A DNA stretch of 62,997 bases, the filler included, from Octopus bimaculoides (taxonomy: Eukaryota), in assembly GCF_001194135.2 (NCBI RefSeq). It is 6 parts of 6 records of this genome, joined end to end, with 100 filler letters (N's around TTAATTAATTAA, not from the genome) between each part and the next. Parts side by side here need not be neighbours in the genome. Positions count along the whole stretch, not along the records: positions 5,366 to 21,749 come from NC_068982.1; 5 more parts are not named here. One strand, written 5' to 3'. Shown piece after piece: positions 10,765 through 11,648 of this stretch. Below the pieces are notes generated by a model, which made no database searches, had not been told where the DNA came from, and saw only the letters and a list, made by a program, of their open reading frames with translations. Within the stretch, counting starts at the first letter, position 1. Every line of letters begins with the position of its first letter. The translations under genes were made by a program, and so were the position numbers.

Positions 10765-10965
10765 TTAAAAGAAACTTTCAGGTTCAAACATTTCTTGGGC
10801 GGCTTTCATAGCCTTTTCTTTAACATCGGCTCTCAATCTGTTCAATACAGTTGGATTGGGTCTGAAGACCTTTGATTCATACAATCCTCGGATTCCACTG
10901 GCATCTTTTTGAACAAATAATACACGGTTGCTTCTCCTGTAGGCGAACAACTGGATACGGAAGAG
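10765..10965 (-). CDS. Exon 5 (terminal) of secreted protein ([34 protein letters not shown]...EPESFF*)
   Basis: Acceptor ttcgcttcag|, 201 nt ending in TAA; the five exons total 864 nt = 287 aa plus stop. Confidence 0.9.
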   Translation of the reverse strand, partial: [66 protein letters not shown]

Positions 10966-11426
10966 CTGAAGCGAATTAAAAATAGGAATTATATTTTTGG
11001 CTTTTAATATCTGCTATTATTGCAAGATATTCTGTTAGTGTTATTGCTTTCTCATCGCGTCTAGAATTGGCAATAGCAGTGTAAAGAGCTCGGTTCTTCT
11101 TTATAAACTGTTTTTTCTAACTTTTACTAGTAATCAGTAATAAGTATTAAACATGTTTACGAATCCAAACTAACTTTTTCCGAGACTAAATGATATAGTG
11201 TTTAGGAGCATTATTCTCGAAGATCATCGTAAATATACTTATGACATTTGCTGTCGACCATTAAAGATTGAAAACAAGAAATATCATCACGTTAAATATT
11301 CATGAAATATATAGTTTTAAAGTGAATTAAGTTGGTCAAAGAACGGGTCCATATAGTTGGCGTTTGTTACATGAAAATAAAATATTATTTTCGTCGAATT
11401 CTACATAATGAAGATATGAAACTTAC

Positions 11427-11648
11427 CTTGAAGAAAGGATGTTCTGGATCAGGGTATCGGATGACTCCTACATCGACAACACTACGTTCCGCATAATCGT
11501 TTTTAATGATAAGTGATTCCAAATTGTCAACAGTTGCACCGGTGAGACCCACAATGTTTCCAAAATCAACGATATCAATTCTGGTGGCAGCCAAAATATC
11601 GGCGTCTTTGATGAGATCATTTGCAAACCATTCAGCTACTGCATCAAC
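11427..11648 (-). CDS. Exon 4 of secreted protein (VDAVAEWFANDLIKDADILAATRIDIV...[17 protein letters not shown])
   Basis: Acceptor ttcttctctaag|, 222 nt, donor |gtaagt, phase 0-0; overlaps ORF 11385..11693. Confidence 0.9.

What the first reader, a model, noticed from the sequence alone, without database searches (positions are those of the whole stretch)
10765..11648. C-terminal strand pattern resembles Cyt/volvatoxin-type pore-forming cytolysins
Seen: [53 protein letters not shown] reads as three long alternating-pattern strands joined by tight turns, after a helical region. From memory, Bacillus Cyt1Aa ends in a similarly spaced three-strand unit (..[43 protein letters not shown]), and [11 protein letters not shown] resembles [13 protein letters not shown]. 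This is pattern-level inference only; identity is low. If true, it would be a candidate cephalopod cytolysin or defence toxin.
Basis: inference. Interest (0 to 1): 0.72.

Follow-up and report, generated by a model that had tools for sequence, protein, structure and literature searches.

The report
Secreted octopus protein with Cyt-toxin-like fold
The flagged stretch is the 3' end of an intact five-exon cephalopod gene for a secreted 287-residue protein of an unnamed family (cephalopods, mushrooms, a fern, an alga, chloroviruses) whose confident predicted structure resembles only the Bacillus Cyt / mushroom volvatoxin membrane-damaging toxins, so it is a candidate animal cytolysin whose activity is untested.

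Summary
Window 10765-11648 (minus strand) holds the last two exons of a gene, and the quoted peptide reads exactly as stated across a canonical intron (FFK|LFR). I completed the gene: 5 exons, TATA box, an 18-residue signal-peptide exon, poly(A) signal, 287 aa. An exhaustive search found 303 relatives (best 57% identity, Octopus vulgaris/sinensis). All are 'uncharacterized' and none has a Pfam family. They come from octopods, cuttlefish, Agaricomycete fungi, a fern, Acetabularia and chloroviruses. AlphaFold2 models of the window protein (pLDDT 89) and of a fungal member (pLDDT 91) each return only Cyt1Aa, Cyt2Aa, Cyt2Ba and volvatoxin A2 as significant PDB matches (E 7e-5 to 2e-3, probability 0.84-1.0). 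The order of secondary-structure elements matches the cytolysin fold. Verdict: a real, uncharacterized, secreted protein with a Cyt/volvatoxin-like fold, probably membrane-active. It is not a sequence-level member of the Cyt family, and its cytolytic function is untested.

The parts
18572..18579 (-). TATA box (TATATAAA), about 52 nt upstream of the start codon
   Evidence: Read directly from the sequence. The promoter role is inferred.
18469..18520 (-). Exon 1 coding part: ATG + 17 codons + 1 nt (phase 1). It encodes MKVQAIIIFFFAIAYCY(G), a signal-peptide-like sequence. Donor is G|GTAAGT.
   Evidence: It has the same 18-residue length and phase as exon 1 of the Octopus vulgaris homologue (MMMISLLFILSTVAIAPG). 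All cephalopod members have such N-termini.
13992..14179 (-). Exon 2 (188 nt; (G)LAKAKTGLQ...MDQELQ). Acceptor is ttttcttatag|, donor is CAA|GTCAGT.
   Evidence: 28 family members hit it in tblastn.
12901..13101 (-). Exon 3 (201 nt; IMIAGTNKL...SVDQEI). Acceptor is tttttcttag|, donor is ATA|GTAAGT.
11427..11648 (-). Exon 4 (222 nt; VDAVAEWF...[11 protein letters not shown]). It encodes the second helical layer and the first long C-terminal strand.
   Evidence: 58 of 73 family members hit it.
10765..10965 (-). Exon 5 ([11 protein letters not shown]...EPESFF + TAA stop at 10767-10765). It encodes the second and third long strands and the C-terminal helix.
11427..11483 (-). Codons for [19 protein letters not shown]: strand 1 of the three-strand unit plus the conserved R-[YF]-P-D-x3-P-[YF]-F-K hairpin tip.
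   Evidence: AF2 strand 180-193. R193 is 97% conserved, P195 is invariant and P200 is 94% conserved across 73 sequences.
10864..10965 (-). Codons for [34 protein letters not shown]: strands 2 and 3 of the three-strand unit.
   Evidence: AF2 strands 202-218 and 221-239. Family-wide hydropathy alternates along them.
10721..10726 (-). AATAAA polyadenylation signal, about 40 nt after the stop codon
   Evidence: Read from the sequence. The role is inferred.

Best explanation
The region is the 3' end of an intact five-exon cephalopod (octopod) gene on the minus strand, running from the TATA box at 18579 to AATAAA at 10721. It encodes a 287-residue secreted protein: an 18-residue signal peptide on its own exon, then a mature single domain of about 269 residues. 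The domain belongs to a conserved, unnamed family and adopts a cytolysin-like alpha/beta/alpha sandwich. A sheet of long antiparallel strands (three consecutive C-terminal strands of 14-19 residues plus one or two earlier ones) sits between two helical layers, in the order alpha-alpha-beta-alpha-alpha-beta-beta-beta, as in Bacillus Cyt toxins and mushroom volvatoxin A2. By analogy with those proteins, I infer this mechanism. The soluble monomer binds a target membrane lipid directly. The helical layers swing off the sheet. The long amphipathic C-terminal strands then insert and the protein oligomerises, permeabilising or disrupting the membrane. In octopods this would serve as a secreted defence, antimicrobial or venom/saliva effector. 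What is shown: the gene structure, the family, the signal-peptide-like N-terminus, the confident predicted fold and its exclusive resemblance to Cyt/volvatoxin. What is inferred: membrane binding, insertion, lysis and the biological role.
For: Gene: canonical AG/GT sites with phases that fit. Exon boundaries are the same as in the O. vulgaris homologue. Family: 303 representatives at E<=1e-3 and 29 at E<=1e-30, with typical lengths of 260-310 aa. Secretion: hydrophobic N-termini occur in all full-length cephalopod members, in Acetabularia and in the Tara transcript. Homologues are expressed as about 1 kb intronless transcripts in a marine metatranscriptome. Fold: AF2 gives pLDDT 89.3 and pTM 0.86 for the window protein, and pLDDT 91.0 and pTM 0.87 for a fungal member. 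An independent BFVD model of a chlorovirus homologue superposes on the window model at TMq 0.80. Foldseek against 350,542 PDB chains: the top 9 hits (window model) and top 8 hits (fungal model) are all Cyt1Aa, Cyt2Aa, Cyt2Ba or volvatoxin A2, with probability 0.84-1.00, aligned over 170-260 columns. The next hits drop to probability of about 0.1-0.2. The element order matches the cytolysin fold as defined for CytC (PMC5390079). The C-terminal strands show family-wide amphipathic alternation and are long enough to span a bilayer. Multiple deep paralogues in octopus genomes fit the pattern of an effector gene family.
Against: TM-scores to Cyt and volvatoxin are low (0.23-0.40; rmsd 10-13 A), so the global geometry differs and convergence on a similar topology cannot be excluded. 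No sequence-level relation was found: hhalign probability is about 0.1, Pfam PF01338 matches 0 of 73 members, and a PDB profile search returns nothing. Evf, the third cytolysin-fold clade, was not among the hits. Fungal, fern and viral members lack signal peptides, so the ancestral role need not be an extracellular toxin. There are no expression, tissue or activity data for this gene, and no paper mentions any of the homologues.
Confidence: 0.5

Rival explanations
1. A secreted lipid- or hydrophobic-ligand-binding or carrier protein that uses the cavity between sheet and helices, as in Evf or Bet v 1/START-like proteins. It would have no pore-forming or lytic activity.
For: The cytolysin fold contains a lipid-binding pocket, and Evf-type members are grouped in it only by structure (PMC5390079). 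The second tier of Foldseek hits are Bet v 1/PYL/START-like ligand binders. Members without a signal peptide in fungi, a fern and a virus fit a non-toxin cellular role.
Against: Bet v 1-like hits have probability of about 0.05-0.2 and TM of about 0.1-0.2. Evf itself is not among the hits. The strongest matches are all lytic toxins.
Confidence: 0.25
2. A protein of unrelated, unknown function whose resemblance to Cyt and volvatoxin is only topological convergence of an alpha/beta/alpha sandwich.
For: TM is 0.23-0.40 and rmsd 10-13 A. hhalign, Pfam and PDB sequence searches are all negative. The strands are longer than in Cyt, and there are extra N- and C-terminal helices.
Against: Two independently modelled members that are about 35% identical give the same exclusive hit list at probability 0.84-1.0. 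The alignment to Cyt1Aa is nearly end to end, 255 columns over a 243-residue target. The order of elements is identical.
Confidence: 0.2
3. Not a functional gene: a chance ORF, a pseudogene or a repeat-derived sequence.
For: No annotated identical protein was found for the window's own product. The introns are full of SINE-like and microsatellite repeats.
Against: All five exons are open with canonical splice sites, a TATA box and AATAAA. There are 303 homologues and a conserved exon structure. The model from the family alignment is confident.
Confidence: 0.03

Closest known systems
Bacillus thuringiensis Cyt1Aa/Cyt2Aa/Cyt2Ba cytolytic delta-endotoxins (Pfam PF01338; PDB 3RON, 6T1A, 1CBY, 2RCI)
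   Same: Single-domain alpha/beta/alpha sandwich with the same order of elements (helix pair, strand, helix pair, three consecutive long C-terminal strands, C-terminal helix). They are the top Foldseek hits for two family members. The three-strand unit is almost the same length, 53 versus 54 residues. Few or no cysteines.
   Different: No detectable sequence homology. TM is only 0.25-0.40. The strands here are longer (14-19 residues), and there is an extra N-terminal helix plus strand. The protein is eukaryotic, intron-containing and carries a signal peptide, rather than being a bacterial crystal protoxin.
Volvatoxin A2 from the mushroom Volvariella volvacea (PDB 1VCY, 1PP0)
   Same: Eukaryotic (Agaricomycete) member of the cytolysin fold. 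It is a significant Foldseek hit (E 3e-4, probability 1.0). The new family is also abundant in Agaricomycetes.
   Different: Volvatoxin is recognisably related to Cyt by sequence (Cyt profile E 2e-11), while this family is not. Volvatoxin is about 200 residues against about 270 here.
Evf (Erwinia virulence factor), the third clade of the cytolysin fold
   Same: It was also grouped with Cyt only through structure, not sequence (PMC5390079). This is a precedent for a sequence-orphan clade of the fold.
   Different: It is not among the Foldseek hits at the thresholds listed.
Chlorovirus hypothetical proteins (ATCV NE-JV-2 275R; BFVD M1I283, M1HBT0)
   Same: True family members by sequence (P0028, E 5e-32) and by structure (TMq 0.80, 31% identity).
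   Different: No signal peptide. The two BFVD entries are longer (367-371 aa). They are uncharacterised, so they add distribution but not function.

Membership tests
Cyt delta-endotoxin family (Pfam PF01338 Bac_thur_toxin, including volvatoxin A2) | Significant sequence match to the family profile | tested here: not met
   hmmscan against Pfam: no PF01338 hit at E<=10 for the window protein and 0 of 73 family members at E<=0.1. hhalign against Cyt alignments gives probability 0.09 and 0.13. BLASTP against Cyt1Aa gives E 0.75. As a positive control, the Cyt profile finds volvatoxin A2 at 2e-11.
Cytolysin fold (structural superfamily: Cyt / volvatoxin / Evf) | Single alpha/beta domain in which a beta-sheet lies between two alpha-helical layers, with element order a1-a2-b1-a3-a4-b2-b3-b4 | tested here: met
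   DSSP of the AF2 models gives H59-78, H86-94, E99-117, H127-151, H155-168, E180-193, E202-218, E221-239, and the same order in the fungal member. This was compared with the CytC description in PMC5390079. I could not check strand pairing or Greek-key connectivity because no coordinates were available.
Cytolysin fold (structural superfamily: Cyt / volvatoxin / Evf) | Significant 3D similarity to solved members | tested here: inconclusive
   The Foldseek top 8-9 hits are exclusively Cyt or volvatoxin, with E 7e-5 to 2.4e-3 and probability 0.84-1.0. But TM is 0.23-0.40 and rmsd 10-13 A, below the conventional 0.5.
Cytolysin fold (functional definition) | Lipid-dependent membrane binding, oligomerisation and permeabilisation (haemolysis or cytolysis) | not testable with these tools
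   This needs recombinant protein and liposome or erythrocyte assays.
Bet v 1 / START-like helix-grip ligand binders | Significant structural match | tested here: not met
   Foldseek probability 0.05-0.2 and TM 0.08-0.2.
EF-hand calcium-binding proteins | Pfam EF-hand match above the gathering threshold | tested here: not met
   EF-hand_1 gives E 0.098 and 12.7 bits against a cut-off of 25.4, in 1 of 73 members only.

The most novel reading that the evidence does not exclude
This is a member of the first animal clade of Cyt/volvatoxin-fold membrane-attacking proteins. On this reading, a sequence-orphan fourth branch of the cytolysin fold is shared patchily by cephalopods, Agaricomycete fungi, a fern, a green alga and chloroviruses, which suggests horizontal spread, possibly through giant viruses. 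Coleoid cephalopods gave it a signal-peptide exon and expanded it into several deep paralogues as secreted defence or venom effectors.
Probability: 0.35. Interest if true: 0.8.

Novelty: new variant of a known kind. Interest (0 to 1): 0.62.

Why it matters
To my knowledge, Cyt-type cytolysins are known from bacteria (Bacillus, Dickeya, Clostridium and others), from Evf, and from one fungal toxin lineage, and no animal representative has been described. This family has about 300 representatives at 50% clustering, no Pfam model, no name and no literature. It would extend the cytolysin fold to animals, plants, algae and giant viruses. It would also give cephalopod biology a new candidate secreted effector family. 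Its patchy distribution makes a testable case of cross-kingdom or virus-mediated gene spread. The proteins are small, have almost no cysteines (a single Cys in the mature protein) and form a single domain, so haemolysis or liposome assays and crystallography are straightforward.

Tried and rejected
(1) A word-indexed homology search with the 140-aa C-terminus found nothing. The exhaustive HMMER search was needed.
(2) Pfam gave no family for the 140-aa fragment, the 269-aa product or all 73 aligned members. It returned only scattered sub-threshold hits (EF-hand, HTH_Card1 and others), which I rejected as noise.
(3) PDB sequence searches with the single protein and with the family profile found nothing.
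(4) hhalign against a narrow (9-sequence) and a broader (26-sequence) Cyt alignment was not significant.
(6) I searched for an upstream exon among long open frames (nothing). I then searched for short ATG-to-donor frames with a hydrophobic core, and this found exon 1. I rejected the long open frame at 14375-14803 as an exon because it has no family or Pfam support.
(7) I rejected P0052's N-terminus (MNIFYYY...) as an intron read-through of a genomic contig.
(8) ORFs in the GC-richer block at 7700-9500 had no Pfam hits.
(9) The Rfam scan of the piece found nothing.
(10) Literature searches for the homologues' accession numbers returned nothing.
(11) A second family copy in the window: none.

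Full report
**Observation**

The piece (5366-21749) is AT-rich eukaryotic DNA with microsatellites and three assembly gaps.

- Exon 4 (11648-11427) follows a polypyrimidine tract and AG (tctctcatttcttctctaag|). It ends ...[19 protein letters not shown] with a consensus donor AAG|GTAAGT.
- Exon 5 (10965-10765) follows ttcgcttcag|. It reads [66 protein letters not shown], and an AATAAA lies about 40 nt further on.

The quoted peptide is therefore real, but it exists only after splicing.

**Gene model**

Two more exons upstream have matching phases and canonical splice sites: 14179-13992 and 13101-12901.

tblastn of 73 family proteins against the window hits only these four exons. The counts are 28, 7, 58 and 42 or more members. 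There is no second copy in the window.

Exon 2 starts in phase 1, so a first exon was missing. A scan for short ATG-to-donor frames with a hydrophobic core gave one clean candidate, at 18520-18469. It encodes MKVQAIIIFFFAIAYCY plus one G, with donor G|GTAAGT. A TATATAAA box lies about 52 nt upstream of its ATG.

This exon has the same length (18 residues) and the same phase as exon 1 of the Octopus vulgaris homologue. That homologue has the same five-exon layout spread over 25 kb.

The complete product is 287 aa: a signal-peptide-like leader followed by a mature protein of about 269 aa.

**Family**

Pfam, PDB sequence searches and the word-indexed protein search found nothing.

The exhaustive HMMER search found 303 cluster representatives at E<=1e-3, 153 at E<=1e-10 and 29 at E<=1e-30. 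Most are 260-310 aa long and align end to end.

The named members are all 'hypothetical' or 'uncharacterized':
- Cephalopods: Octopus vulgaris and O. sinensis (best hit, 57% identity, E 3e-98), at least four O. sinensis loci, two adjacent O. bimaculoides loci, Argonauta hians and Sepia pharaonis.
- Agaricomycete fungi: Schizopora, Trametes, Leucocoprinus, Amanita, Phlebia, Pilatotrama and Grifola.
- Others: the fern Ceratopteris richardii, the green alga Acetabularia, and Acanthocystis turfacea chlorovirus NE-JV-2.

None of 73 aligned members matches any Pfam family consistently. No paper in the library mentions the accession numbers.

A full-length homologue occurs on intronless contigs of about 1 kb from a marine metatranscriptome, so relatives are transcribed.

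Signal-peptide-like N-termini are present in all full-length cephalopod members, in the Tara transcript and in Acetabularia. They are absent from the fungal, fern and chlorovirus members.

In a rough neighbour-joining tree the cephalopod sequences form one group containing several deep paralogous lineages.

**Structure**

AlphaFold2 on the 73-sequence alignment gave a confident model, with mean pLDDT 89.3 and pTM 0.86. Its elements in order are H11-24, H27-32, E38-45, H51-56, H59-78, H86-94, E99-117, H127-142, H145-151, H155-168, E180-193, E202-218, E221-239, H241-245 and H249-262.

A second model, of the Leucocoprinus member (about 35% identical), gave the same architecture, with pLDDT 91.0.

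An independent public model of a chlorovirus homologue (BFVD M1I283) superposes on the window model at TMq 0.80.

Foldseek against 350,542 PDB chains gave these results:
- Window model: the nine best hits are Cyt1Aa (6T1A, 6T14, 6T1C, 3RON), volvatoxin A2 (1VCY, 1PP0), Cyt2Aa (1CBY) and Cyt2Ba (2RCI). E runs from 7e-5 to 1.4e-3 and probability from 0.96 to 1.00, with alignments of 219-255 columns. The tenth hit has probability 0.09.
- Fungal model: the same eight structures come first (E 7.5e-5 to 2.4e-3, probability 0.84-1.0), and then probability falls to 0.10.

The published definition of the cytolysin fold is a sheet between two helical layers, with order a1-a2-b1-a3-a4-b2-b3-b4 (PMC5390079). 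That is the order seen here. This protein also has an extra N-terminal helix/strand and a C-terminal helix.

**Limits of the resemblance**

TM-scores are 0.23-0.40 and rmsd is 10-13 A. The shapes therefore do not superpose well globally. The strands here are longer (14-19 residues, against 12-14 in CytC).

I had no coordinates, so I could not verify strand pairing.

At the sequence level there is no detectable relation:
- hhalign of the family against a 9-sequence and a 26-sequence Cyt alignment gives probability 0.09 and 0.13.
- BLASTP against Cyt1Aa is not significant.
- The three-strand unit aligned to Cyt1Aa's scores no better than shuffles, with local z 0.55 and global z 1.58.
- As a positive control, the same Cyt profile finds volvatoxin A2 at E 2e-11.

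One detail is worth noting. At E 0.44 it is not evidence.

**Mechanism**

What is shown:
- an intact gene;
- a leader peptide;
- a confident alpha/beta/alpha sandwich;
- three consecutive long strands whose family-averaged hydropathy alternates residue by residue;
- a nearly invariant R-[YF]-P-D-x3-P-[YF]-F-K hairpin tip between the first two of these strands.

What is inferred by analogy with Cyt and volvatoxin (background in PMC5390079 and PMC13211469):
- The secreted monomer binds membrane lipid.
- The C-terminal strands insert and the protein oligomerises into pores or detergent-like/filamentous aggregates.

I put about 0.75 on the fold assignment and about 0.5 on the combined statement that this is a secreted, membrane-active Cyt-like protein.

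The rivals are:
- a non-lytic lipid-binding protein (0.25);
- topological convergence with an unrelated function (0.2);
- a non-functional locus (0.03).

**Comparison and novelty**

This is not a member of the Cyt family as defined by sequence (PF01338): that feature was tested and not met.

It is best described as a new, sequence-orphan clade with the cytolysin fold, comparable to the way Evf was joined to Cyt by structure alone. To my knowledge no animal Cyt-fold protein has been described, and the family has no name, Pfam model or literature in the resources available here.

I therefore rate it a new variant of a known kind, of moderate-to-high interest, pending a proper structural superposition and a lysis assay.

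Noticed in passing
window 12031-12192 and 13807-13968; 12385-12500 and 13726-13841; 16304-16382 and 17726-17804: Interspersed SINE-like repeats (75-82% identical copies) lie inside introns 1-3 of the gene, and some are adjacent to microsatellites. There are no Rfam or tRNA-family matches.
   Followed up: partly
window 7700-9500: This block has higher G+C (0.43-0.44 against about 0.33 around it), downstream of the gene. It has several 80-146-codon open frames on both strands but no Pfam hit. It may be a degraded transposable element or another gene's UTR or exon.
   Followed up: partly
window 7554-7639: A tandem repeat of period 18/36 nt (CAGGAACTGGTATATCCAA-like, 2.5-4 copies) lies next to an (AT)n tract that flanks an assembly gap.
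   Followed up: no
window 7089-7476, 15299-16118, 18957-19231: Three runs of N (assembly gaps) are each flanked by AT, TATG or TG/CA microsatellites. The first two repeat finder families and most of its inverted pairs are artefacts of these Ns and simple repeats.
   Followed up: yes
L002 (Octopus vulgaris OX597819.1, 40849270-40894333): The closest homologue has a 16.7 kb first intron that separates the 18-residue signal-peptide exon from the rest. The window's intron 1 is 4.3 kb. The position of the signal-peptide exon is conserved between paralogues.
   Followed up: yes
family members P0028, BFVD M1I283 and M1HBT0: Chloroviruses (for example ATCV NE-JV-2 ORF 275R) encode family members, and so do a fern and Acetabularia. 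This is a strikingly patchy distribution that suggests horizontal transfer, possibly through giant viruses.
   Followed up: partly
alignment A1 members (not in the window): One family member carries an LDL-receptor class A domain (E 8e-15). The Acetabularia protein has an extra N-terminal region of about 200 residues. So the domain is sometimes fused to putative targeting modules.
   Followed up: no
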